A DNA stretch of 64,000 nucleotides, from assembly GCF_003918875.1 (NCBI RefSeq), contig NW_025766966.1:310001-374000 (forward strand), read 5' to 3'. Below are positions 4,954 to 60,125 of this stretch, piece by piece. The notes under the pieces were generated by a model, which saw only the letters and a program-made list of their open reading frames with translations, ran no database searches and was not told the DNA's origin. Positions within the stretch are counted from its first letter, which is position 1. Every line of letters starts with the position of its first letter. The position numbers and the translations under genes are program-made. This stretch comes from Haliotis rubra (taxonomy: Eukaryota).

Positions 4954-5467
4954 GTTAATTACGAGTCTCTGGAATTCAGTACTATATATGCACTAATATT
5001 GTAAGAGGCACACACTCACCTCACGTTAATACTTTTTAAAGGACCATGGAAATATTGGTGCATATATGTTATATATGCCAGACCATATGTATGTATGTTT
5101 GTGTTTTATTCTTTTTCTTTAATTAGCACGTCGATTCGCACCTAATAACATATGAAAACGAATATCTGTAAATACTCGAGCCTGGCCCAGCAATTGACAC
5201 AATACGTACAATGATATGAGCAATTCGGATGCAATGAAATTAATTCAGGAAGAAAGCGAGTCTGACCATACAATCCAGTTTATCGTACAATGTACGGACA
5301 GCATCGGTTGCTGCGTCAAATAATTCGCGGCATATAGAACGTGCAATAATAATGACGTCACACACAAACCAATGACGTTGAACACAACTGCTGTGAAAGA
5401 CAACAGTCAGCACGATGCAAGAAATGTAAACTATTGTCCAGCATGTCATAAGGAAAGAACCTTCCAA

Positions 5468-8400
5468 ATGTGGAAACAGATAACCCTTTTGTGTATACTC
5501 CTGCTTCCATGTGCGTCATATAGAGTGCCCAAAGACGGCTATGGAGATGAAGATTTTGAAGAAACCGAAAACGGGTAAGAACCTGAAGAGAATTTGTGGA
5601 TTTGACATCCCAATTTTTGTTAGACCATGGACACAAACGGTGTCCATATCGTTACTGTTTCAGAACCAGTTTCTTTTAATATAAGTTTATAACTGTGTGC
5701 TTAGGGGAAAAGTATCAATAACTTTGATATTTCCTTTTGTATGCACGTCATGTACCTGTACGTATGTATTTGGATATGATCCGGTCTATCAAGAAGACCG
5801 CGTTTGCTTGCCGCATGACTATCAGATTTGGAAACATGATGATCTCGTAACTGTACCTTCTTCTATGAACAACGAACGAGGCAGAGTTAAGAACAAGATG
5901 TAATTAGCATCAACATGTTCGCTAATTTACGTTTGTTCGATGTTACACGTCTCAGGTCAAGGAGAGACCTTACGACTAAGGGGAATAACTCTCACATGGC
6001 ATCTTTTGCATATTCCTCTAGGGAACTGATAATTTAACCTCAGCTTTAAAAAAATGCCTATGTTCTCAATTTATCATCTTTCACTACAAACTTATGGTTG
6101 TCCTATAATCAGGACTGGAAACTGCCGCTAAATCCAGCCATAATTATGATTCATAATTATATTTTGTTGGTTTTGTCTGTTGTTTAAGGCTGTGTTCAAC
6201 TGTATTATAGCCATATGGCGGTGGTCTGTTAATAATCGAGTCTGGACCAGACAATCCAGTGATCAACATCATGAGCATTGATCTACAAAACATGACATGA
6301 GACACCCAAATCAGCGAGTCTGACCACCTAATCCCTTACAAGCATAGGTAGCTGAAGACCAATTTTATCCCAAATCTTCATGGGTCTCATGATTTTAATT
6401 ATATTTAATTTCATATCATTTTAACAAAAATGTTATGTTCAATCACCTGGTACAAATGTACCCATTTCAAGTCACTGTATTTTCAATATCAAGTGCTATG
6501 TGTGAAACAGTGTTCGTTTTATTGTTTCATTGTGCTCTTCATTTTCTAGCCTCCTTGTTGACAATATGGGACATTCTTGATTATATGTTAATCATCAACA
6601 CACTGCTTAACTGGGGAAAATTTGTAACAGGGTTTAAAATCTTTAATAAGTACAGATTTTTTGTCCCTCAAAATATCCACTTACCACTGGCAAGAAGTAA
6701 CAGCAAGTTATACTTGCCTGCAGAATTGAAAATCCACTTGTCAAGGGCATGAGAGGATCTTTAAACCACTGAAGAGGTTATGATAACAGGGGTGGAAATA
6801 ACCCATTGCCCGACGCCCGAGTCCAGTGTTTTTTTCTGTCGGGCTAGCAAATTTGTATATCACACTGTACCGGTGTCCAGTTGACTTTTCAATGTTAATT
6901 ATGTTCTTTATGTAAAATATCAACAAGAAAATAGCTGGTATAGTGGAAAAATTATCAGGGCAAGTGATTTTACATGTGCCACTGTACCGGAGTACACTAG
7001 CAATTTTAAAGTTATTTCCACCCCTGGTTATGTCTTATAACTCATGTATTTCTGTGAATGATGAGCCCATTTACCACAGGTCATTTAAGAATAAGTGATT
7101 CTGTTTCAGGCAATCCCTACAGGGTCTGCACAAATTACTAGACAAGGTATCAGGGAAAAGGCCTAGAGTAAATACTGCAGGTAAGGTTGACAAACGGAAT
7201 CAACAAAAGAGAAGTCAGAAAGGTGTGGGCAAGTCTCATGTCTATGCAACCAGACCTGGAATATACCAACTAGAACCATTAGGCACTGCAGGTCACCTAC
7301 ATATTTCTGGAATATTTGCATTATTAATTATTGACTGTTAAAAGTTGAAAATTTAAAGGGTACCTAAATACAAATACTACAGGAGCAAATCTCAGGGTGC
7401 CCAGTACCCTGATGGCCCACTGATTACTTGCTAGCTATATATGAAACAAGACTGTTCTAGGGGGTACAAGGAAATAGCATTAGGTTTGCAAGAAAAGTTC
7501 TAACACCAATGTATGGTGTTTGTGTCCTTGGCTCAGAATACTAATAATGTTTTGGGGTGGGTTTTTTTTTCATATAATCTACCAAATGTTATCAAAAATG
7601 TCTGTAATTAATTATTTGTTATACAGGGGACAGCATGTCTACACAACTCAAGAGAGATGAATCACCTGATGTCAAGTCCAGTTCATCAAGAGGCAAACAC
7701 AAAGACAGGAAAGAAAAGGGAACAACGAATGAATCTGATAAGTCAAAATTACGAAGTGACAAACAAGACAAGGCAAAATCAACTAAAGGCAATTCAAAGT
7801 CATCAAGTGACAAAGTTCAACCATCTAAAGGCAAACAGGACGAGAAAAAATCGTCTGATAGCAAGTCTATTTCATCTAGCAGCAAGTCTCTTCTGGAAAA
7901 AATAAACCGCCTATTGAAAGAACTGCGTCAAATTCTGTCAAAGAGCAAACCAGAACAAAGAAAAGTAGTTAAAGGTGTTCAGAGTAAGAATAATATTAAC
8001 TCTGATTCATCAAAACAAGGAACAGTAAGTGATTCAAGGTCAAAGTCAGCAAGTGGCAAATCGTCAGGTAGGTATAAATAAGCTACTGATGGGATAAGTA
8101 AATCAACTTCAAAAGAAACATCTAATAGGGGTAAATGCTGAAAGAAAGACAATTGAAGAAAAAAAAGTAAGGTGGCAAAATTTTACGCTATAGGATAGTA
8201 ACAGTTTTGTTTCTTTGGACTGTAAATTGAGTTCATGACAGCAGGAAATTTTACACATCATGGTTAAAATTTTATTAAATATAGCAGGAACCTCACTTTG
8301 AGTTGGGCAATACCATTTTGAAGTGTTTTTCGGGTACATCTAGGCATGGTGGCTTAATGCCCATAGTAAAATTATCCATGTCTTCAAATTTTACCACTTT

Positions 8401-10619
8401 GATGTATCCCATAAGCACTGATATTGTGCTGAAACAAAATTGGGCAAACCAGGATTTATCTGGGACAAACCATGATCATAGGTTTCTGGTGTGTGCAAGG
8501 GATGTAACTGAAAAGTCCAAAATACTGTTTTCAAACTATAGCTGAGCCATTGTTGGTGCTGATAGTGATGAAATATGTTTTCTGAAATCATGACTGAATA
8601 TTCATATCCTGATTGTAATGTATAAGGTTCTGTATTCATTTGTTTATTCATCATAAATTGTTTTTCAACTGAAAGGATGAACAAATTTAAAACTTTACAT
8701 CAAATTTTGTCAAGCAGTTGTTTGTAAACTCAAGGTGAAATATCTTTTTATTGTCATTCACCATGAATGATGTTGGGGAAGGGAAGGATCTTTCCTTAAG
8801 ATCCAGTTAGGCCTAAAAAAAAGCAAGCTTGTGGTTCCGATTTCCCGACCGACCCTAAATATTCCCACGGAGCCTAACAATTTTACTCACCACATAATAA
8901 ATTAAATTTATTTTCTGACACATGAGTAATGTAAAAATATTTTGCAAAAAAAATAATTAAAACCTACCTACCTACCCTAGTTCTGAAATGTAGGAAATCG
9001 GAACCACAACATTTATTTTTTTTGGCCTTATTAAAATGGCAGCTCCTCATGTATTTCTTGTCATGTGTACTTAAGTGTGCACACGGTTTAGGGCTGATCA
9101 ATCTTACTACTTACTTCCAGCCGTTATCAGCTATTGTTAATTTCTTATCATCATGAAATTTACATGATCACATGTAAGTATTGTTTTGAGCAAATTTTGT
9201 TTAATTACAATTCGACAGAAATCATTGCATTTATTGAACTTTGTTTCTATTCTGTTCTGTTGAAAAGGAACCATATGACACCATATTTTTTATGACCACA
9301 GCTCCAAAGATTCTTGTGATGATGAAAGTTAGATAACTTCTATATCTATAATGCTGAAACAAATTATGTGTTTTCAATTTTGCGTTCATAACAACCGCAG
9401 TGTTTTTGTTCTGTTGACTACCCCGTACCTAATACTGGTATATATTGTTTTCCAGATTATGTGGAAAAGGACAAGAAGAATGACAATGATCATTATAATT
9501 TTGATGACTTTATCTATGATCAAGATGAAGATGTTAAGCCTAGGATGGAAAAATCAAGAAAGAATTATGATGATGATGATGATCGGAAGTCTGATATGAC
9601 AAAGCGAAAACGACAAGATAAGGAAGGCAACCTGAGATCAAGAAAAGGCAAGTCAAAGAGGAAATTGGATGATTTTTTTGATGATGATGATTATGATGAT
9701 GATTATGATGTTAACATGTTTGGCAAAGGAAAATCCAAAAAGCAGGATACTGATGTTGATCTAAAAACCAAAAGAGGAAAATTAAGCAGTCTAGATGATG
9801 ATGATGAAGGAAAATCCAAAAAGCAGGATACTGATGTTGATCTAAAAACCAAAAGAGGAAAATTAAGCAGTCTAGATGATGATGATGATGAAGGAAAATC
9901 CAAAAAGCAGGATACTGATGTTGATCTAAAAACCAAAAGAAGAAAATTAAGCAGTCTAGATGATGATGATGATGAAGGAAAATCAAAAAGCAGGATACTG
10001 ATGTTGATCTAAAAACCAAAAGAAGAAAAAAGCAGTTAAGCAGTCTAGATGATGATGATGATGATGAAGAAAATCAAAAAAGCAGGATACTGATGCTGAT
10101 CTAAAAACCAAAAGAAGAAAATTAAGCAGTCTAGATGATGATGATGATGATCTAGATGATGATGATGATGAAGGAAAATCCAAAAAGCAGGATACTGATG
10201 TTGATCTAAAAACCAAAAGAAGAAAATTAAGCAGTCTAGATGATGATGATGATGAAGGAAAATCAAAAAAGCAGGATACTGATGCTGATCTAAAAACCAA
10301 AAGAAGAAAATTAAGCAGTCTAGATGATGATGATGATGATCTAGATGATGATGAGGAGGAGGAGGAGTTAAATAGACAAGATATAGAAGATGACCTTAGG
10401 TCAATAAAAGACAAATCAAAGAGGAAAGATGATGATGATGATGATGAGGTGGTGGAGAAGGAAGATGAGGAGGAGGATGGTGGTGATGATGAGGAGGAGG
10501 AGGAGCATGGAAACCGAAAGTTTAAAAGACAAGATCTGGAAGATTACCTTAGGTCAAGAAAAAACAAATCAAAGATAAAAGATGATGATGAGGAGGAGGA
10601 TGAAGATGATGCTGATTAA
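5468..10619 (+). CDS. Secreted low-complexity Lys/Ser-rich and Asp/Glu-rich repetitive protein (~594 aa; orphan, possible biomineral/matrix protein). Exons 5468-5574, 7110-7180, 7627-8067, 9456-10619
   Basis: Exon 1 encodes a signal-peptide-like MWKQITLLCILLLPCAS; GT-AG junctions join in phases 2,1,1 (GG|gtaaga..ttcag|G; G|gtaagg..tacag|GG; G|gtaggt..tccag|AT). Exon 4 has 7 units of GKSKKQDTD(V/A)DLKTKR(G/R)KLSSL(D)nE and ends ...DEDDAD-TAA (10617-10619). Two 1-nt deletions (~9985, ~10068) break the frame in this sequence. Confidence 0.85.
6165..6386 (-). mobile_element. SINE family B copy (decayed, full length), intron 1 of the secreted-protein gene
   Basis: GAGTCTGGACCAGACAATCCAGTGATCAAC body; head reverse complement GACCCATGAAGAT...GGTCTTCAG. 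Confidence 0.85.
6787..7026. mobile_element. MITE with 16-bp perfect TIRs (hAT-like CAG..CTG ends)
   Basis: CAGGGGTGGAAATAAC ... GTTATTTCCACCCCTG; a related decayed element lies just upstream (~6628-6771). Confidence 0.75.
8810..9027. mobile_element. PIF/Harbinger-type MITE
   Basis: GGCC-A-rich-TTGTGGTTCCGATTTCC inverted ends, flanked by TTA on both sides (8807-8809, 9028-9030). Confidence 0.8.
9727..10345 (+). repeat. Coding tandem repeat, 7 units of ~81-105 bp with variable (GAT)n
   Basis: GCAGGATACTGATG recurs at ~9742, 9823, 9907, 9990, 10082, 10187, 10271. Confidence 0.95.
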
Positions 10620-13047
10620 TCATTTGAATAAAATAACTGAAAATACAGGCAGGGACAATTATAATATAGGTGTGTGCACCCAACCCTGTTGTTTGAGACA
10701 CCTTGCATGTTAGCTTGTGTCTATTCATCTATCATGAGTTCATGTTTTACTTGGTGTATCATTGCATGCATGAAAATGATATCATGCCTACTTTCTCATT
10801 TTCAAAATAAGAGATCTGCCTCTGTATGGTGATAATACAGTAAATGAAAATAAAAAATGACAAGAAGATGATGTCGAAGGTGATAGCATGTTGACGACAA
10901 AAGAAAACCATGAAAGGCACATGCCCAGTATTTCAAATTTGGGACACAATCAAGAAAGTTTGATGAATATAAAGACAGATAATGACGTCAGTAAGAACCA
11001 CAATGACATCATGGTGATAATCTTGTGCATGAAACAGGAAAGATTTAGATAACAATTGGGAAAGATACAACCTTTAATCAGTAAAGAATAACTAACAAGT
11101 ATAAATATGGGATACATGAATGTATGGTCAATGATTTATCACAAACCATGAAACAGTATCATCTGCAACCGAGAGTTTGTAGTTCAATTATTATAAATCC
11201 ACTATATGCTGCTTTTACCTGATCACTATGCAATTATTTATGTTTACATTCTCTTTCATACAGTAAATATAATTTTGTTATTTCTTGGTTATTTTGGTGA
11301 CAAAAATATTTTGTCAATAACAGTGTATGAATTAAGCCAAAGATCCAGCCAGACATCAGGGCTGGTTCAAAATGTTACCAGCCCAAAATGGATTTAACCA
11401 GACCAAATATGAATTCCATGCTGTGAATTTACTCAGATACAGATATAGTGAATATATAAATGTTTGTGTTTGATGTATGTCTACATGGAAATACAATGTA
11501 CATTGATTGGTGTCAGCCGGATTCTGCAGTATGGGCTGATCCCTAAGATATAATTGTTAACCAAAGTGCCAACAAATGTTTGGATGAACTGGAGTCTTAA
11601 GTGTAACAGTTGACTGCAGTCCATTGGTAATGCTTTCATCAACTGGCCCAGGGTCCCATTCCACAGCACAATCTCATGACTGTCATAAGGCTTTGTTAAA
11701 GTATGGGAGTTATGAACATCTTAGCGCTAAGATGGCTTTGATCTGTTTGATTGGCATTTTAGAAGCTGGTGAGTAATAAGAAAGTAAGATTCTTTATAGA
11801 TAACAACTTTATTATATATGATGCGATATTTCGGTATGGATTCTTACACCGTTGTCAAGCAAAAGTCACTCTTGTTTGACAACAGTCTAAGAATCCATAC
11901 CAAAACGTTGCATCATGACATATGTAATAAAGAAGTTGTTATCCATAAAGAATCTTACTTTCTTAAGATGGCTTTGTTGAACAGACTCTGGAAGGATAGT
12001 TTCCAGCCTGCTTTGATATAGGTTGATGATTGCTCACCATGTAATGTAGCAACTTTCACTTGTTACACATGTATACTGTTATACGTTGATCACAGTTTGC
12101 AGTATATCAAGAAAGTTCATTCACTTGTACATTATATTTGTTTCCACAAGATATTGTGTAAATGTTGTATCATTAATAAAGATTTGATCAGAAACGAGTT
12201 GATTAGCACTGTCCTTCCAAACTTGTACATTTCTATGGTCAAATAGTTATGAGAAATTAGTCCAAATTTCGAGAATCAGTTTTGTTGTCACATGTGTCAC
12301 AGCCATGACTGATTTTGTTACATAAGTATAGCTTTTTTTCTCAGTAAATGCTGGGCTGAATATTGCCTGAAAATAATTCTGTCATCAAGATATTGCCTCA
12401 AAGTTGTAAGTCCATTAACATACTCGAGTGTAAAATTAATATAATTACATTCCTTTGCTGGTGGTTAATATAATTACATTGCTTTGCTGGTGGTCAAGAT
12501 GGACAAGGCTGTAGGTAATGGAGTGTCATGTCTATGAGGAATTTGGGACATCACTGACTAATTTGGGCTGGCCTCCCTGCTGAAACACTGTGGTAAAATA
12601 CTGTTCTAAAAACAACTCACTTAATTTCATGTACTTAGCACTGAGCTTCTTTTTACTTAAATAATGAATGATAATAAAACATTCACTGGTATAGATGAAT
12701 GTTGACAAATAAAAAAACTAACCAGTCTAGTAGTTACTAGTTAGGTGACCCATTATCACTGGACTTCCACTCCTGGCAGTATATAACGTTATATGATCGC
12801 CAGTTCAACATTTCAACATGTTTACTCTATCTGAGCAGCTGGCCCCTAGGTGCAGCTACAGATGGACACACACCCTGAAATACCCTGTACAATAATATGC
12901 CTTGTTTATATCACATGCATTCCAAGGCAATTGCTGAAATATATGATTTGACTAAAGGGGTCTCCATGAAACAGCAAATGAATGTCGGCTGATACGCAGC
13001 CATGGAGGTAAAAGTGTTTGGAAACAAACAATATACCATTTTAAGTA

Positions 13048-38269: not shown

Positions 38270-40147
38270 GTCTGATGGAGGATAGATGTTTGTGAAGGTG
38301 GTTTTAACTTGGTTGCTTACCTCTTGTAGGTGAATATTATCTTGCATCAATTGAACATTGCTGCAAATGTTACAGAATGTAGTTACTACACTATGCTCTT
38401 TTGTTTGACTCAGTTGTAAAGTAGGACACATGTTGGAGATTATAGTTACTACATTAATCTTGACCTCTTGACTTAGTTGTAAAGTAGGACAGATGTTGGA
38501 GATTATAGTTACTACATTAATCTTGACCTCTTGACTCAGTTGTAAAGTAAGACACATGTTGGAGATTATAGTTACTACATTAATCTTGACCTCTTGACTT
38601 AGTTGTAAATCTTGACTAAGTTGTAAAGTAGGACACATGTAGGTTACTACACATGTTGGAGATTAGATTATAGTTACTACATTAATCTTGACCTCTTGAC
38701 TTAGTTGTAAAGTAGGACACATGTTGGAGATTATAGTTACTACATTAATCTTGACCTCTTGACTTAGTTGTAAAGTAGGACACATGTTGGAGATTGTAGT
38801 TACTACATTAATCTCGACCTCTTGACTTAGTTGTAAAGTAGGACAAATGTTACAGATTATAGTTAATACATTAATCTTGACCTCTTGACTCAGTTGTAAA
38901 GTAGGACACATGTTGGAGATTATAGTTACTACATTAATCTTGACCTCTTGACTCAGTTGTAAAGTAAGACACATGTTGGAGATTATAGTTACTACATTAA
39001 TCTTGACCTCTTGACTTAGTTGTAAAGTAGGACACGTGTTGGAGATTATAGTTACTACATTAATCTTGACCTCTTGACTCAGTTGTAAAGTAGGACACAT
39101 GTTGGAGATTATAGTTACTACATTAATCTTGACCTCTTGACTTAGTTGTAAAGTAGGTCACATGTTGGAGATTGTAGTTACTACATTAATCTCGACCTCT
39201 TGACTAAGTTGTAAAGTAGGACACATGTTGGAGATTATAGTTACTACATTAATCTCGACCTCTTGACTTAGTTGTAAAGTAGGACACGTGTTGGAGATTA
39301 TAGTTACTACATTAATCTTGACCTCTTGACTTAGTTGTAAAGTAGGACACATGTTGGAGATTATAGTTACTACATTAATCTTGACCTCTTGACTTAGTTG
39401 TAAAGTAGGTCACATGTTGGAGATTGTAGTTACTACATTAATCTCGACCTCTTGACTAAGTTGTAAAGTAGGACACATGTTGGAGATTATAGTTACTACA
39501 TTAATCTCGACCTCTTGACTTAGTTGTAAAGTAGGACACATGTTGGAGATTATAGTTACTACATTAATCTTGACCTCTTGACTTAGTTGTAAAGTAGGAC
39601 ACATGTTGGAGATTATAGTTACTACATTAATCTTGACCTCTTGACTTAGTTGTAAAGTAGGACACATGTTGGAGATTGTAGTTACTACATTAATCTCGAC
39701 CTCTTGACTTAGTTGTAAAGTAGGACAAATGTTACAGATTATAGTTAATACATTAATCTTGACCTCTTGACTCAGTTGTAAAGTAGGACACATGTTGGAG
39801 ATTATAGTTACTACAATAATCTTGACCTTGACTCAGTTGTAAAGTAGGACACATGTTGGAGATTATAGTTACTACATTAATCTTGACCTCTTGACTTAGT
39901 TGTAAAGTAGGACACATGTTACAGATTATAGTTACTACATTTATCTTGACTTAGTTGTAAAGTAGGACACATGTTGGAGATTATAGTTACTACATTAATC
40001 TTGACCTCTTGACTCAGTTGTAAAGTAGGACACATGTTGGAGATTGTAGTTACTACATTAAACTTGACCTCTTGACTCAGTTGTAAAGTAGGAGATTATA
40101 GTTACTACATTAATCTTGACCTCTTGACTCAGTTGTAAAGTAGGACA
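38270..40147. repeat. 63-bp minisatellite array, roughly 27-29 units
   Basis: Unit GACACATGTTGGAGATTATAGTTACTACATTAATCTTGACCTCTTGACTYAGTTGTAAAGTAG; diverged units at the left edge. Confidence 0.97.
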
Positions 40148-44021: not shown

Positions 44022-44860
44022 ATGGAATAGTTTGACACATACTGGATAGCTTGTGTAAATGTGGAATAGTTAGAGACATACTGAATAGCTTGTGTAAATG
44101 TGGAATAGTTTGACAAATACTAAATAGCTTGTGTAAATGTGGAATAGTTTGACACATGCTGAATAGCTTTGTGTAAATGTGGAATAGTTTGACTCATACT
44201 GAATAGCTTGTGTAAATGTGGAATAGTTTGACACATACTAAATAGCTTGTGTAAATGTGGAATAGTTTGACACATACTGAATAGCAGCTATGTTGAATAG
44301 TTTGACACATACTGAATAGCTTTGTGTAAATGTGGAATAGTTTGACTCATACTAAATAGCTTGTGTAAATGTGGAATAGTTTGACACATACTGAATAGCA
44401 GCTATGTTGAATAGTTTGACACATACTGAATAGCTTTGTGTAAATGTGGAATAGTTTGACTCATACTAAATAGCAGCTATGTGTAAATGTGGAATAGTTT
44501 GACACATACTGAATAGCTTTGTGTAAATATGGAATAGTTTGACACATATCACATTCATTAAATAGTTTACAAGTGTTAAATAACTTGACTTCCTGAATAG
44601 CTATGTATGCATATGGAATATTTGGATACATCAGATACTATGATACACTGCATAGGTATGTTGATTATATGGAATAGTTTAACACTCATGCAATGCTTAG
44701 CATTGTATGGCATACTTGTGTTAACATATGGACTATTTAAATCTGTATGGAATAGCTATGTTTGCATTAGGAATAGTTTAACACATTTGGAATATTTCTC
44801 CATATTAATATATCTACACACACTGAATAGTTATCACATACTGAATATTTCCACAAATAT
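44022..44860. repeat. ~39-bp minisatellite with a decayed 3' flank
   Basis: GGAATAGTTTGACACATACTGAATAGCTTGTGTAAATGT ~13 copies (44022-44548), then degenerate GAATAG units. Confidence 0.92.
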
Positions 44861-48400: not shown

Positions 48401-49050
48401 CATATCAAGTCAGCAGTAAGTGATTTATTCAGCTGGGACTGTTAGTTTTTGTAATTATTGGATTATGATGGTGATTGTTGAGGGATGACACTAACAACGT
48501 GTCAGAAACTGGCTTTGATAGCGCAGAGATATTGATGTTTGGACCCTCATATATTTGGGCATTATTTCTAGGTATGGGAAACAGTGGGGAAAATACCACT
48601 TCAACAGAAGTCAAGAATGAACAAGCAATTACATTTTTATCATATTTTTTATTTTCTAGATGTTTATTTTCAAATAAAATATTATTTCTCGGACTTATAA
48701 TTAGTCAACAAGTGGGTCAATACCAATTTTTGCTGTACATGGACCTGTTTCGGTCTTTGAAGACATAAAATTTGTTTTACGGAACTGTTTCCTTTTCTTA
48801 ATTGTGTATGATGCTGATGTTTGGACATTGAAGGAGAATTAAACCACACTGACACCAGCTAGTCAAAATTATTTATGGCTGCAATGAATCAATTATTGGA
48901 CTTACAACTATTTTCTAAATAGGTGATCTGAAAGGCGTTATTCTGAATGTTTTTATTTTGTACTAAACTAAGCAAATCATCTGTAGTCCTTAACTGTCAG
49001 CTGAAGTTATACTAGCTTCAGACGTATACTATTGTGAACTTGAGAATGGA

Positions 49051-49338
49051 AAATGGTCCTGACAGATCTGGAAACATAACCAAAATGGTCCTGACAGATC
49101 TGGAAACATAACCAAAATGGTCCTGACAGATCTGGAAACATAACCAAAATGGTCCTGACAGATCTGGAAACATAACCAAAATGGTCCTGACAGATCTGGA
49201 AACATAACCAAAATGGTCCTGATCTGGAAACATAACAAAATGGTCCTGACAGATCTGGAAACATAACCAAAATGGTCCTGACAGATCTGGAAACATAACC
49301 AAAATGGTCCTGACAGATCTGGAAATATAACCAAAATG
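49051..49338. repeat. 32-bp minisatellite, ~9 copies
   Basis: AAAATGGTCCTGACAGATCTGGAAACATAACC repeated. Confidence 0.96.
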
Positions 49339-56542: not shown

Positions 56543-58070
56543 TAAACTCTGTAAAAAGAAACGCGAACCCTGTCCTCAGATATGAAAAATTCGTTTGAAT
56601 GAAGTTATTGCTTCCAAACTAAATTTTATTCGAATGTATTGAAATGATACACGTAATTAATGAAGATTACCATCCAAACAACTGCATTTGTGCGCGATAA
56701 GTGTATTTTATTGCTTATTCCGTCCACAACGCATGAAATGACCCCTCATGGTGACTTCGCACACAAAACACATGCAAATCATGAAAATGGCAGTTAATGT
56801 AGGGTGTATAAAAGCCCATGTGCTTCCGTATTATATTCATTCATTTGTCGCCGAAAGCTGTGTTAAAATGCCACGATTGAGTGCTGCCGAATCAAATATC
56901 GCCATTGGTCGTGTTCAAGCCGGAGAAAGTTTTGGAACTGTTGCACGGCACCTAAATGTTCACAAAACAACGATATCCCGACTTTGGAGCCGCTTACAAC
57001 AACTTCAATTTGACCAACGATCGCCCGAGAAGTGGAAGGCCAAGAATCACGACCCCTTCAAGATCGGTACATCCGGGTCCATCACCTGCGTATCGGCATG
57101 CCCTACCAACCGTGGACTGCCACACAAATACCAGGTTTGAGGAGAGTGTCAGCTCAAAACGATTAGGAACCGCCTGAAAGAAGCGGGTTTACGTGCCTGT
57201 AGACCAGTTGTTGGACCTGTACTACGCCCCTACATCGACGCCACGACTCAGGTGGTGCAACAACGTAAGGATACGGACTTTACAAAACTGGAGGCGAATC
57301 TGGTTTTCTGATGAATCACGCTTTTTGCAACGCCACGACGGAAGACAGCGCCTGTATAGGAGACGTCATAAAGTTTTATGCGCCCATCTGCGTCCGACAG
57401 GTGGACAGGATTTGGCGGAGAAAGCCATCATGGTTTGGGGAACCATCTCATACAACCAGAAATCAGACTTGGTGATCGTCCAGGGAACCTGACAGCCCAA
57501 CGCTACATCAACCACGTGTTAGAGCTTCACCTTCTCCCGATTATTGACCAACAGACACAGATTTTCAACGGGACAACGCCTCGCCTCATACTGCACGTGC
57601 AACAATGAACTTTCTGCAGAATTCCAACGTCAATGTCTTGCCATGACCCTCTAAATCACCAGACCTCAACCCTATTGAACACCTGTGGATACTCTGGATC
57701 GACGCGTACGTCAACGTCAGCGCCGCCACAGACGCTGCAACAGCTCGCCGCGTTGCACTGCAGGAGGAGTGGAGAGCCATTCCCCAGGAAAGAATCCGGG
57801 CGTCTTATCCGTTCTTGTCCAAGGAGATGCCGTGCAGTGATTGCAGCCGTGGGGTGCTCATACGAGATACTGAGAAAGACGCCCCCTGGTGACAAACTGG
57901 TGTCTGTGAGATGACTTTTGAAATGACAATTTTAAACATGCCCATCTGGGTTATTATTCTGCCAAATTTCAGACTTCTGTCTTAAATAATAAAATGCCGT
58001 GTCGTCCTAAAACTTCAGATCAAAATCTCTAAAATACAGGGGGTTGCGTTTCTTTTTTTGACAGAGTTTA
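56543..58070 (+). mobile_element. Full-length decayed Tc1 (DD34E) transposon, ~1.5 kb
   Basis: TIRs TA-AACTCTGT.AAAAAGAAACGC.AACCC / GGGTTGCGTTTCTTTTTTTGACAGAGTT-TA; transposase motifs across frames: HTH, PRSGRPRITT, WFSDESRF, DNASPH, SPDLNPIEHLW; 34 residues between the second D and E. Confidence 0.95.
56868..57873 (+). pseudogene. Frameshifted Tc1 transposase
   Basis: ATG 56868 (MPRLSAAESNIAIGRVQAGES...), multiple frameshifts and a TGA at the conserved W of WPxxSPDL; ends TRY*. Confidence 0.9.
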
Positions 58071-58074
58071 TTTC

Positions 58075-60125
58075 ATGATTCACTTGCAGGATATTTCTGT
58101 CATGATGCGTTTGGGGGATATCTGTCATGATGCATTTGGGGGATATCTGTCATGATGCATTTGGGGGATATCTGTCATCATGCGTTTGGGGGATATCTGT
58201 CATGATCTATTTAGGGGATATCTGTCATGATGTGTTTAGAGGGTGTCTGTCATCCTTTTATGGCATATCTGTCATGCTGCATTTCAATTTGCACTCATGA
58301 GATATCCATCATGATCTACTCAGAGGATACCTGTCTTGATGCACTAAGTGATATCCATCATGATCTATTCAGAGGATACCTGTCTTGATGCACTAAGTGA
58401 TATCCATCATGATCTATTTCGGATATCTGTCATGATACACTTGGGGATACCTGTCATGCTGCACTTAAGGGATATCTGCCATGATACACTTGGGGATACC
58501 TGTCATGCTGCACTTAAGGGATATCTGCCATGATACACTTGGGGATACCTGTCATGCTGCACTTAAGGGATATCTGCCATGATACACTTGGGGATACCTG
58601 TCCTGCTGCACTTAAGGGATATCTGCCATGATACACTTGGGGATACCTGTCATGCTGCACTTAAGGGATATCTGTCATGATACACTTGTGGGATACCTGT
58701 CATGCTGCACTTAAGGGATATCTGCCATGATACACTTGGGGATACCTGTCATGCTGCACTTAAGGGATATCTGCCATGATACACTTGGGGATACCTGTCA
58801 TGCTGCACTTAAGGGATATCTGCCATGATACACTTGGGGATACCTGTCCTGCTGCACTTAAGGGATATCTGTCATGATACACTTGGGGATACCTGTCATG
58901 CTGCACTTAAGGGATATCTGTCATGATACACTTGTGGGATACCTGTCATGCTGCACTTAAGGGATATCTGCCATGATACACTTTGGGATACCTGTCATGC
59001 TGCACTTAAGGGATATCTTCCATGATACACTTGGGGATACCTGTCATGCTGCACTTAAGGGATATCTGCCATGATACACTTTGGGATACTTGTCATGCTG
59101 CACTTAAGGGATATGTCATGATACACTTGGGGATACCTGTCCTGCTGCACTTAAGGGATATCTGTCATGATACACTTGGGGATACCTGTCATGCTGCACT
59201 TAAGGGATATCTGTCATGATACACTTGGGGATACCTGTCATGCTGCACTTAAGGGATATCTGCCATGATACACTTGGGGATACCTGTCATGCTGCACTTA
59301 AGGGATATCTGACATGATACACTTGGGGATACCTGTCCTGCTGCACTTAAGGGATATCTGCCATGATACTCTTGGGGATACCTGTCATGCTGCACTTAAG
59401 GGATATCTGCCATGATACACTTGGGGATACCTGTCATGCTGCACTTAAGGGATATCTGCCATGATACACTTTGGGATACCTGTCATGCTGCACTTAAGGG
59501 ATATCTTCCATGATACAGTTGGGGATACCTGTCATGCTGCACTTAAGGGATATCTGTCATGATACACTTGGGGATACCTGTCATGCTGCACTTAGGGATA
59601 TCTGTCATGATACACTTTGGGATACCTGTCATGCTGCACTTAAGGGATATCTGTCATGATACACTTGGGGATACCTGTCATGCTGCACTTAAGGGATATC
59701 TGTCATGATACACTTGGGGATACCTGTCATGCTGCACTTAAGGGATATCTGTCATGATACACTTGGGGATACCTGTCATGCTGCACTTAAGGGATATCTG
59801 TCATGATACACTTAGGGGATACCTGTCATGCTGCACTTAAAGGATATCTGTCATGATATACTTGGGGATACCTGTCCTGCTGCACTTAAGGGATATCTGT
59901 CATGATACACTTGGGGATACCTGTCATGCTGCACTTAAGGGATATCTGTCATGATACACTTGGGGATACCTGTCCTGCTGCACTTAAGGGATATCTGCCA
60001 TGATATTCTTGGGGATACTTGTCATGCTGCACTTAAGGGATATCTGCCATGATATTCTTGGGGATACTTGTCATGCTGCACTTAAGGGATATCTGTCATG
60101 ATATTCTCGGGGATATACGTCATAA
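58075..60125. repeat. Minisatellite: 25-bp monomers grading into a 49-bp dimer array (~34 units)
   Basis: Left GGGGATATCTGTCATGATGCATTTG; main unit TTGGGGATACCTGTCATGCTGCACTTAAGGGATATCTGYCATGATACAC. Confidence 0.97.

What the first reader, a model, noticed from the sequence alone, without database searches (positions are those of the whole stretch)
5468..10619. Orphan secreted block-polyampholyte protein (basic K/S domain plus alternating KR-rich and poly-Asp blocks)
Seen: four exons join in phase into ~594 aa: signal peptide, short acidic stretch, ~145-aa Lys/Ser-rich region with one amphipathic helix (SLLEKINRLLKELRQILSKS), then ~10 units alternating basic and poly-D/E runs; no Cys in the mature chain. 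The 7 young units (KKQDTDVDLKTKRGKLSSL-Dn) appear to derive from the same ancestor as 3 older flanking units (KRQDKEGNLRSRKGKSKRKL-Dn, NRQDIEDDLRSIKDKSKRK-Dn, KRQDLEDYLRSRKNKSKIK-Dn). Known: secreted Asp-rich repetitive low-complexity proteins are typical of mollusc shell matrices and bind Ca2+. Inference: a lineage-specific biomineralisation, adhesive or coacervate-forming protein. The ORF track shows it only as unconnected pieces.
Basis: partly seen in the sequence, partly recalled or inferred. Interest (0 to 1): 0.7.

Follow-up and report, generated by a model that had tools for sequence, protein, structure and literature searches.

The report
Abalone-only charged disordered protein gene
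This is a real, spliced and transcribed single-copy gene of the blacklip abalone with no detectable relatives. It encodes a floppy protein with a basic Lys/Ser head and an Asp-rich repeat tail that is probably secreted, but its reading frame is broken twice in this assembly and nothing yet ties it to the shell.

Summary
The four exons exist and join in phase: 5468-5574, 7110-7180, 7627-8067 and 9456-10619. A 928-nt spliced RNA contig from a sister organism joins exons 2-3-4 exactly.

The composition, the single helix, the 7 young and 3 older units, and the absence of Cys after the signal are all confirmed.

- Exon 4 is not one open frame in the assembly. Two 1-nt deletions, in an A-run and a GG inside the aberrant fourth unit, shift the frame 2>1>0, and a straight reading stops at 10010-10012. 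The genome is the Nanopore-based Haliotis rubra assembly, so assembly error is the likelier cause, but this is unproven.
- Exon 1, which carries the signal peptide, is not supported by any read. The sister organism's transcript has about 146 nt upstream of exon 2 that do not lie on the window.

The orphan status holds. There were zero hits in 1.84 billion protein representatives, and a control showed the search would detect relatives down to about 40% identity. The gene is single copy.

None of 11 motif strings occurs in the H. laevigata shell proteome files.

The scan has noted other acidic secreted repeat genes in this genome, but not this one. I read it as a probable secreted Ca-binding polyampholyte. 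Interest is modest.

The parts
5353..5378 (+). Promoter-like elements about 100 nt upstream of the ATG: a CRE palindrome TGACGTCA (5353-5360), CCAAT (5369-5373) and a CRE half-site
   Evidence: Read from the sequence. The CRE 8-mer occurs 5 times in the window against 0.7 expected. Its function is inferred only.
5468..5574 (+). Exon 1: ATG, a signal-peptide-like segment (n-region MWK, hydrophobic core ITLLCILLLPCA, C-A-S then Y), then the acidic stretch DGYGDEDFEETEN. The donor is GG|GTAAG and the exon ends in phase 2.
   Evidence: Kyte-Doolittle 9-mer peak 3.3. It is unique in the genome. No read supports it: organism B has no contig on 5297-5887.
7110..7180 (+). Exon 2 (71 nt), basic, QSLQGLHKLLDKVSGKRPRVNTA
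   Evidence: Splice sites. An RNA contig piece with depth 6.27 lies on about 7108-7178, inferred from the other-letter rows at 7140, 7159 and 7160 and from the bin depth.
7627..8067 (+). Exon 3 (441 nt): Lys/Ser-rich basic disordered domain, net charge +19, pI 10.2
   Evidence: X8 record 25 covers 7624-8064 with 0 gaps and runs directly on to 9453. Composition. AF2 model.
7875..7943 (+). Amphipathic, leucine-zipper-like helix (residues 83-105 of exon 3). The a/d positions are L, I, L, L, I/L and the hydrophobic moment reaches 0.73.
   Evidence: AF2 pLDDT 96-98. Heptad and moment analysis. The only PDB near-hits are designed coiled coils at E about 0.5.
9456..10619 (+). Exon 4: acidic tail with ten basic-segment-plus-D/E-run units and stop TAA at 10617-10619. 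It reads as three frame pieces: 9458-9982, 9985-10068 and 10071-10616.
   Evidence: RNA contigs lie on 9453-9665, 9776-9891 and 10514-10942. AF2 of 9458-9982 gives mean pLDDT 52 and no secondary structure.
9726..10354 (+). Young tandem array: 7 units of 81-107 nt (period 84, with a higher-order period of 189)
   Evidence: TRF scores 708-720 at 92-98% matches. Unit table.
9979..10069 (+). Aberrant unit 4 (91 nt). It has A5 where its sister units have A6 or CA5 (frame break 1, about 9983-9990), a +6 insertion, and G where the others have GG (frame break 2, 10069/10070).
   Evidence: Short-read contigs break at 9666-10513, so the breaks could not be checked.
9608..9673 (+). Older unit 1 (KRQDKEGNLRSRKGKSKRKL + D-rich run)
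10371..10436 (+). Older unit 2 (NRQDIEDDLRSIKDKSKRK + D run)
10524..10589 (+). Older unit 3 (KRQDLEDYLRSRKNKSKIK + D/E run)
10620..10942 (+). 3' UTR, at least to 10942 in organism B. There is an AATAAA at 10627-10632.
   Evidence: X8 record 28 covers 10514-10942. Sequence.

Best explanation
This is a genuine, transcribed, single-copy, abalone-restricted gene of Haliotis rubra with four exons. It encodes a protein of about 590 residues that is almost wholly disordered and has segregated charges.

The parts of the protein are:
- a probable N-terminal signal peptide;
- a basic Lys/Ser head (exons 2-3, net about +23) containing one short leucine-zipper-like amphipathic helix;
- an acidic tail (exon 4, net about -50) built of ten units, each a basic segment of about 19 residues followed by a run of 4-10 Asp/Glu. 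Seven units come from a recent 84-nt tandem expansion.

Inferred mechanism: the protein enters the secretory pathway. The poly-Asp blocks bind Ca2+ with low affinity and high capacity. The interspersed basic blocks and the basic head pair with acidic blocks of neighbouring molecules, so the protein self-associates (complex coacervation), helped by helix-mediated oligomerisation. The product would be a Ca-loaded condensed phase in a secretion such as shell matrix, mucus or adhesive, or granule content.

The two frame breaks in unit 4 are most likely uncorrected Nanopore homopolymer deletions in a repeat that short reads could not polish.

Shown: the gene, the splicing of exons 2-4, transcription, the disorder, the charge pattern, and the orphan status. 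Inferred: the signal peptide and secretion, Ca binding, coacervation, and the assembly-error reading.
For: - Splicing and transcription: X8 record 25 joins 8064/8067 to 9453/9456 at consecutive record positions and carries an exon 2 piece. X8 has no depth in the introns.
- Exon borders and phases.
- Signal-like exon 1 with an in-phase donor, unique in the genome.
- CRE and CCAAT upstream of the ATG.
- Disorder plus one helix.
- Composition D 20.5, K 17.8, S 11.9, E 7.1, R 6.4 %, with charge blocks.
- Units.
- No relatives: with the detection control.
- Genome identity and assembly method (Nanopore 30x, Racon twice, Pilon once).
- Both breaks are single-base deletions in homopolymers inside one unit. 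The conserved unit peptide continues in the shifted frames to the natural stop.
- The indels seen between organisms A and B in exon 4 are 3 or 6 nt.
Against: - No read shows the exon 1-exon 2 junction. The sister organism's transcript has about 146 nt upstream of exon 2 that do not lie on 5100-7109 at 90% or better, and its DNA contigs leave 5297-5887 uncovered.
- Of the 8 listed exon 3 differences between A and B, 7 are non-synonymous. Exon divergence (2.5%) is not below intron divergence (2.1%), so there is no sign of purifying selection.
- The frame breaks may be real.
- No motif of the protein occurs in the H. laevigata shell proteome files, nor in the main text of any paper in the held library.
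- No RNA run of H. rubra itself was listed as holding the gene.
- The tissue of expression is unknown.
Confidence: 0.5

Rival explanations
1. It is an intracellular, nuclear or nucleolar acidic-basic disordered protein of the nucleolin/Nopp140/HMG-tail kind. Exon 1 would not belong to the mRNA, or would be untranslated, and translation would start at ATG 7635 in exon 3. The K/R clusters would act as nuclear localisation signals and the D/E runs would bind histones or basic proteins.
For: - Alternating K-rich and D/E-rich blocks with Ser-rich stretches are typical of such proteins (established knowledge).
- ATG 7635 opens the 148-aa ORF.
- Exon 1 is unsupported by reads, and the organism B transcript has a 5' end that does not match.
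- There are many bipartite-NLS-like K/R clusters.
Against: - The frame is open and in phase through exon 2 and exon 1 back to an ATG followed by a textbook hydrophobic core.
- No RRM, SRP40, HMG or other nuclear domain was found.
- Nuclear housekeeping proteins are normally conserved, and this one has no relatives.
Confidence: 0.2
2. It is a transcribed but decaying or never-constrained young gene. The two frameshifts would be real, the product would stop at 10010-10012 (about 390 aa), and the sequence would drift neutrally with no specific function.
For: - There are two frame breaks in the assembly.
- Non-synonymous to synonymous differences are 7 to 1, and exon divergence is about equal to intron divergence.
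- The protein is absent from protein collections.
- RNA contig depth is low at 4.6-6.3, although that call itself warns that contig depth is a poor measure of expression.
Against: - Both breaks are homopolymer deletions in a tandem repeat of a Nanopore assembly polished only once with short reads.
- Exon 3 has no gaps or frame breaks in organism B.
- The exon 4 indels between the organisms are multiples of 3.
- Most replacements are conservative: K>R, D>E, L>V, S>A.
- All four study-P3 runs listed (X8, X10-X12, each a different sample) hold part of the gene.
Confidence: 0.15
3. It is a granin-like or prohormone-like precursor of the regulated secretory pathway. This shares the signal peptide of the best explanation. 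The difference is that the many KR/RR/KK sites would be cut by convertases, releasing repeated acidic peptides, and the acidic blocks would aggregate with Ca2+ in granules.
For: There are 44 dibasic pairs, 19 of them KR or RR, placed regularly in every unit. The protein has tandem identical units, acidic spacers and a signal-like N-terminus.
Against: There are no Gly-Lys-Arg amidation sites, no Cys loop or granin motif, and no Pfam hit. Basic residues are too dense for defined peptide products. No peptide data exist.
Confidence: 0.1

Closest known systems
Asprich / aspein (Asp-rich shell-matrix proteins of pterioid bivalves; described in PMC6003135, my recall for the domain order)
   Same: A signal peptide, then a basic region, then an Asp-rich, repetitive, disordered acidic region. 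Presumed Ca2+ and carbonate-mineral binding. Lineage-restricted and fast-evolving.
   Different: No sequence similarity. Asp is 20.5% here against up to 75% (for the 75% figure). The tail is interrupted regularly by strongly basic segments. The protein was not found in an abalone shell proteome.
Pif 80 (aragonite-binding low-complexity half of the Pinctada Pif precursor; PMC11291548)
   Same: A low-complexity, CaCO3-binding protein rich in Asp together with Lys and Arg (the composition is from my recall). In other words, a charged polyampholyte rather than a pure polyanion.
   Different: Pif 80 is cleaved from a precursor that carries VWA and chitin-binding domains. Here there is no such domain and no homology.
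Sarcoplasmic-reticulum histidine-rich Ca-binding protein (HRC) and calsequestrin-type luminal Ca buffers (my recall)
   Same: A signal peptide. Tandem repeats that each combine a basic segment with a run of about 10 acidic residues. An acidic C-terminal end without KDEL. Low-affinity, high-capacity Ca2+ binding is the expected chemistry.
   Different: The basic segments are Lys/Arg, not His (His is 0.7%). There is no homology and no muscle context. It is a vertebrate family.
Nucleolin / Nopp140-type nuclear acidic-basic proteins
   Same: Alternating acidic and Lys-rich blocks, Ser-rich stretches with acidic neighbours (CK2-type sites), and disorder.
   Different: Those proteins have no signal peptide, carry RRM/GAR or SRP40 regions, and are conserved across eukaryotes. 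None of that is found here.

Membership tests
Asp-rich shell-matrix proteins (aspein/asprich type) | Sequence homology to family members | tested here: not met
   0 hits with exon 3 in 1.84e9 representatives. 0 hits with exon 4a. No Pfam match.
Asp-rich shell-matrix proteins (aspein/asprich type) | Very high Asp content (tens of percent, up to about 75%) | tested here: not met
   D is 20.5% overall. The paper counts abalone shell proteins with 25-36% D as Asp-rich.
Asp-rich shell-matrix proteins (aspein/asprich type) | Physically present in the shell organic matrix | tested here: inconclusive
   11 motif strings, including the expected tryptic peptides, are absent from 28 supplementary files of the H. 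laevigata shell proteome. Caveats: it is another species, some files were cut, and the protein is trypsin-unfriendly.
Asp-rich shell-matrix proteins (aspein/asprich type) | N-terminal signal peptide | tested here: inconclusive
   The sequence features fit. No SignalP was available, the joined model was not submitted anywhere, and the exon 1-2 junction has no read support.
Pif/BMSP | VWA and chitin-binding domains in the precursor | tested here: not met
   No Pfam domain in any exon piece at E<=1 apart from sub-threshold noise.
Granins | Granin family motif or domain | tested here: not met
   No Pfam hit.
Nucleolin/Nopp140-like nuclear proteins | RRM/GAR or SRP40 regions, and no signal peptide | tested here: not met
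   No Pfam hit. A signal-like exon 1 lies in phase.
Intrinsically disordered polyampholytes (a physical class, not a homology family) | High fraction of charged residues of both signs, with predicted disorder | tested here: met
   The fraction of charged residues is 0.39 in exon 3 and 0.57-0.68 in exon 4. AF2 gives low-pLDDT coil apart from one helix.

The most novel reading that the evidence does not exclude
This is an abalone-specific, newly evolved secreted 'diblock' polyampholyte, with a basic zipper-bearing head and a poly-Asp/basic repeat tail. It would self-coacervate with Ca2+ and act as a liquid mineral-precursor or adhesive phase. It would be invisible to trypsin-based shell and mucus proteomics and missing from gene catalogues because the reference assembly breaks its frame.
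Probability: 0.2. Interest if true: 0.55.

Novelty: new member of a known kind. Interest (0 to 1): 0.3.

Why it matters
Molluscs make many lineage-restricted, repetitive, charged secreted proteins, and these control mineral and adhesive secretions. Each new one adds a natural design for Ca-binding or phase-separating polymers. This one has a clean, regular alternation of basic and poly-Asp blocks and a single oligomerisation helix, which would make it a convenient model polyampholyte. It also illustrates how long-read homopolymer errors in tandem repeats may hide such genes from annotation. Without tissue, protein or binding data it remains one more uncharacterised orphan.

Tried and rejected
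- Pfam on the exon pieces gave only sub-threshold noise.
- HMMER of exon 3 against 1.84e9 representatives gave 0 hits. A control showed that copies with up to 60% random substitution would still be detected and that composition-matched shuffles do not hit.
- A word search with exon 4a gave 0 hits. Only proteins of 101-322 aa were candidates, so this says nothing about longer relatives.
- ESM Atlas gave no usable hit.
- PDB searches gave only insignificant designed coiled coils.
- Paralogue searches in the own genome with exons 1, 3 and 4 and the exon 1 DNA region found only the locus itself. This also rejects the idea that exon 1 is transposon-derived.
- An exact-product look-up of the 148-aa genomic ORF found nothing on record.
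- A motif search found no paper with any of the motifs in its main text.
- The H. laevigata genome paper has no supplements held.
- The reads could not settle the frameshifts, because all laid runs are contigs that break at 9666-10513.
- I considered an intron removing unit 4 (91 nt would restore the frame). I rejected it because there is no GT..AG at the required positions.
All searches were made exon by exon, by reference.
Full report
**Where the window comes from.** The window is G000:C2076:310001-374000 of a 1,378,282,171-base genome in 2,855 contigs. The published Haliotis rubra assembly A6 has 1,378,265,264 bases in 2,854 contigs (PMC6774278). The difference of 16,907 bases and one contig is about the size of a mitochondrial genome. 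I therefore take the genome to be blacklip abalone. It was assembled from roughly 30x Nanopore reads with two rounds of Racon and one of Pilon.

**Gene model.** Reading the sequence and checking the borders gives four exons:
- exon 1, 5468-5574 (ATG, donor GG|GTAAG);
- exon 2, 7110-7180 (acceptor tttcag|, donor CAG|GTAAGG);
- exon 3, 7627-8067;
- exon 4, 9456-10619 (stop TAA).

**Read evidence.** Only contigs, not raw reads, could be laid.
- X8, guessed to be RNA, has no depth in the introns.
- Its 928-nt record 25 lies on 7624-8064 (record positions 215-655) and continues at 9453-9665 (656-862). Intron 3 is therefore removed exactly, with a 3-nt CAG ambiguity.
- Three other-letter rows at 7140, 7159 and 7160, with the same depth of 6.27 and distances to an end, place a piece of about 71 nt on exon 2.
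- Further X8 contigs lie on 9776-9891 and 10514-10942.
- The four study-P3 runs listed (X8, X10-X12), each from a different sample, hold part of the gene.
- Exons 2-4 are therefore transcribed and spliced in organism B. Its DNA (X3, X4) differs from the window by about 2%, so I take it for a sister species, probably H. laevigata.

**Caveat on exon 1.** Organism B's DNA contigs leave 5297-5887 uncovered, while organism A's contig covers it with 3 differences. The size fits exon 1 plus about 39 nt of leader, but the junction is not shown.

Exon 1 stands on sequence alone:
- M-W-K, a 12-residue hydrophobic core (Kyte-Doolittle peak 3.3) and C-A-S before Y;
- an in-phase consensus donor;
- uniqueness in the genome, so it is not a transposon;
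- a CRE palindrome and a CCAAT box about 100 nt upstream. The CRE occurs 5 times in the window against 0.7 expected.

Exon 4 is not one open frame in the assembly.
- Frame 2 carries the protein from 9458 to about 9982.
- The conserved unit peptide then continues in frame 1 (9985-10068), and then in frame 0 (10071-10616) to the stop.
- Read straight, the ORF ends at 10010-10012.
- Both shifts are single-base deletions inside the fourth young unit (9979-10069, 91 nt). It has A5 where its sisters have A6 or CA5, and G where they have GG. The same unit also has a 6-nt insertion.
- The short-read contigs all break at 9666-10513, so cannot settle the matter.

I favour assembly error at about 70%, for four reasons:
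- Both breaks are homopolymer deletions.
- The repeat could not be polished by multi-mapping short reads.
- The shifted frames stay open and keep the unit.
- The three A-versus-B indels seen in exon 4 are 3 or 6 nt long.

A real truncating allele is not excluded.

**The protein, computed on exon pieces and never joined.**
- Composition is D 20.5, K 17.8, S 11.9, E 7.1 and R 6.4 %. There is no Cys after the signal.
- Exons 2-3 have net charge about +23 (pI 10-11). Exon 4 has net charge about -50.
- AlphaFold2 on exon 3 gives one confident helix, residues 83-105 (pLDDT 96-98), and coil elsewhere.
- The helix has L/I at a and d heptad positions over three heptads and a hydrophobic moment up to 0.73.
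- Exon 4a is modelled as coil throughout, with mean pLDDT 52.
- Ten units are confirmed. Seven are near-identical (TRF period 84, with a higher-order period of 189). Three are older and are 68-73% identical to each other and 25-36% identical to the young ones. Q3, D4, L9 and K15 are invariant.

**Relatives.** None was found.
- Pfam gave nothing.
- HMMER of exon 3 against 1.84 billion representatives gave 0 hits.
- My control shows such a search would find copies with up to 60% random substitution, embedded in a longer protein, at E<1e-5. Composition-matched shuffles do not hit.
- The exon 4a word search gave 0 hits, limited to proteins of 101-322 aa.
- The Atlas and PDB searches gave nothing significant.
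- The gene is single copy in its own genome.

**Evolution.** Of the 8 listed exon 3 differences between A and B, 7 change the amino acid. They are mostly conservative: S>A, D>N, D>E, K>R, L>V, Q>E, I>S. Exon 3 divergence (11/441, 2.5%) is no lower than intron divergence (about 29/1363, 2.1%). The sequence is thus not under visible purifying selection. This fits a composition-constrained disordered protein, positive selection, or no constraint at all.

**Function.** None of 11 motif strings, including the expected tryptic peptides of the repeat, occurs in 28 held supplementary files of the H. laevigata shell proteome (PMC6003135) or in the main text of any paper in the held library. This is weak negative evidence, because the species differs, some files were cut, and the K/R density is hostile to trypsin. 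It nevertheless leaves the biomineralisation reading without support.

I commit to the following reading. The protein is a secretory-pathway polyampholyte. Its poly-Asp blocks bind Ca2+, and its basic blocks, basic head and zipper helix drive self-association.
- Confidence in a real, expressed orphan gene: about 0.85.
- Confidence in secretion: about 0.6-0.65.
- Confidence in the whole mechanism: lower.

The rivals are a nuclear acidic-basic protein starting at ATG 7635, a decaying or unconstrained young gene, and a granin- or prohormone-like precursor.

**Comparison with known proteins.** The architecture resembles asprich (basic then acidic domain), Pif 80 (a D/K/R-rich CaCO3 binder; PMC11291548) and the vertebrate SR protein HRC (tandem basic-plus-acidic repeats behind a signal peptide). 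It is homologous to none of them and fails their defining features; see the membership table.

**Earlier notes of this scan.** Other notes describe further acidic secreted repeat genes in the same genome and a gene broken by probable assembly errors. None concerns this locus.

**Verdict.** This is a real but ordinary kind of mollusc gene: a lineage-specific, repetitive, charged and probably secreted disordered protein. Interest 0.3.

Noticed in passing
window 6085-6300, 6676-7069 and 8646-9039: Very high-copy interspersed repeats lie inside introns 1 and 3. Summed contig depth reaches 10^5-10^7 in the DNA runs, with hundreds of loose ends at 6209-6286. They look like SINE/MITE-like elements.
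   Followed up: no
window 5297-5887: The promoter, exon 1 and the start of intron 1 have no contig from organism B (X3, X4, X8), although both flanks do. This could be a structural difference between the two abalones or simply a contig hole.
   Followed up: partly
window 38405-40147: A large minisatellite of period 63 nt and about 23 copies at 94% identity (higher-order period 189). It produces spurious 127-146-aa ORFs on the minus strand.
   Followed up: partly
window 58073-60115: A minisatellite of period 49 nt and about 35 copies at 96% identity, with a related 25-nt array just upstream.
   Followed up: no
window 44023-44548 and 49050-49338: Further tandem arrays: period 39/118 with 13.5 copies, and period 32/123 with 9 copies. 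The second underlies a 169-aa repetitive ORF.
   Followed up: no
window 2159, 5353, 10983, 35214, 35258: The CRE palindrome TGACGTCA occurs 5 times against 0.7 expected from shuffles. One copy lies about 110 nt upstream of the gene's ATG, one just downstream of the gene, and two lie 44 nt apart at 35.2 kb.
   Followed up: partly
window 56748-57140: A 130-aa ORF has a helix-turn-helix-like stretch that resembles the N-terminus of a Tc1/mariner transposase. This was judged by eye only.
   Followed up: no
window 9874 and 9456-9665: Organism B carries an extra GAT (one more Asp) after 9874 and a 6-nt shorter stretch in 9456-9665. The Asp-run lengths therefore vary between the two abalones.
   Followed up: partly
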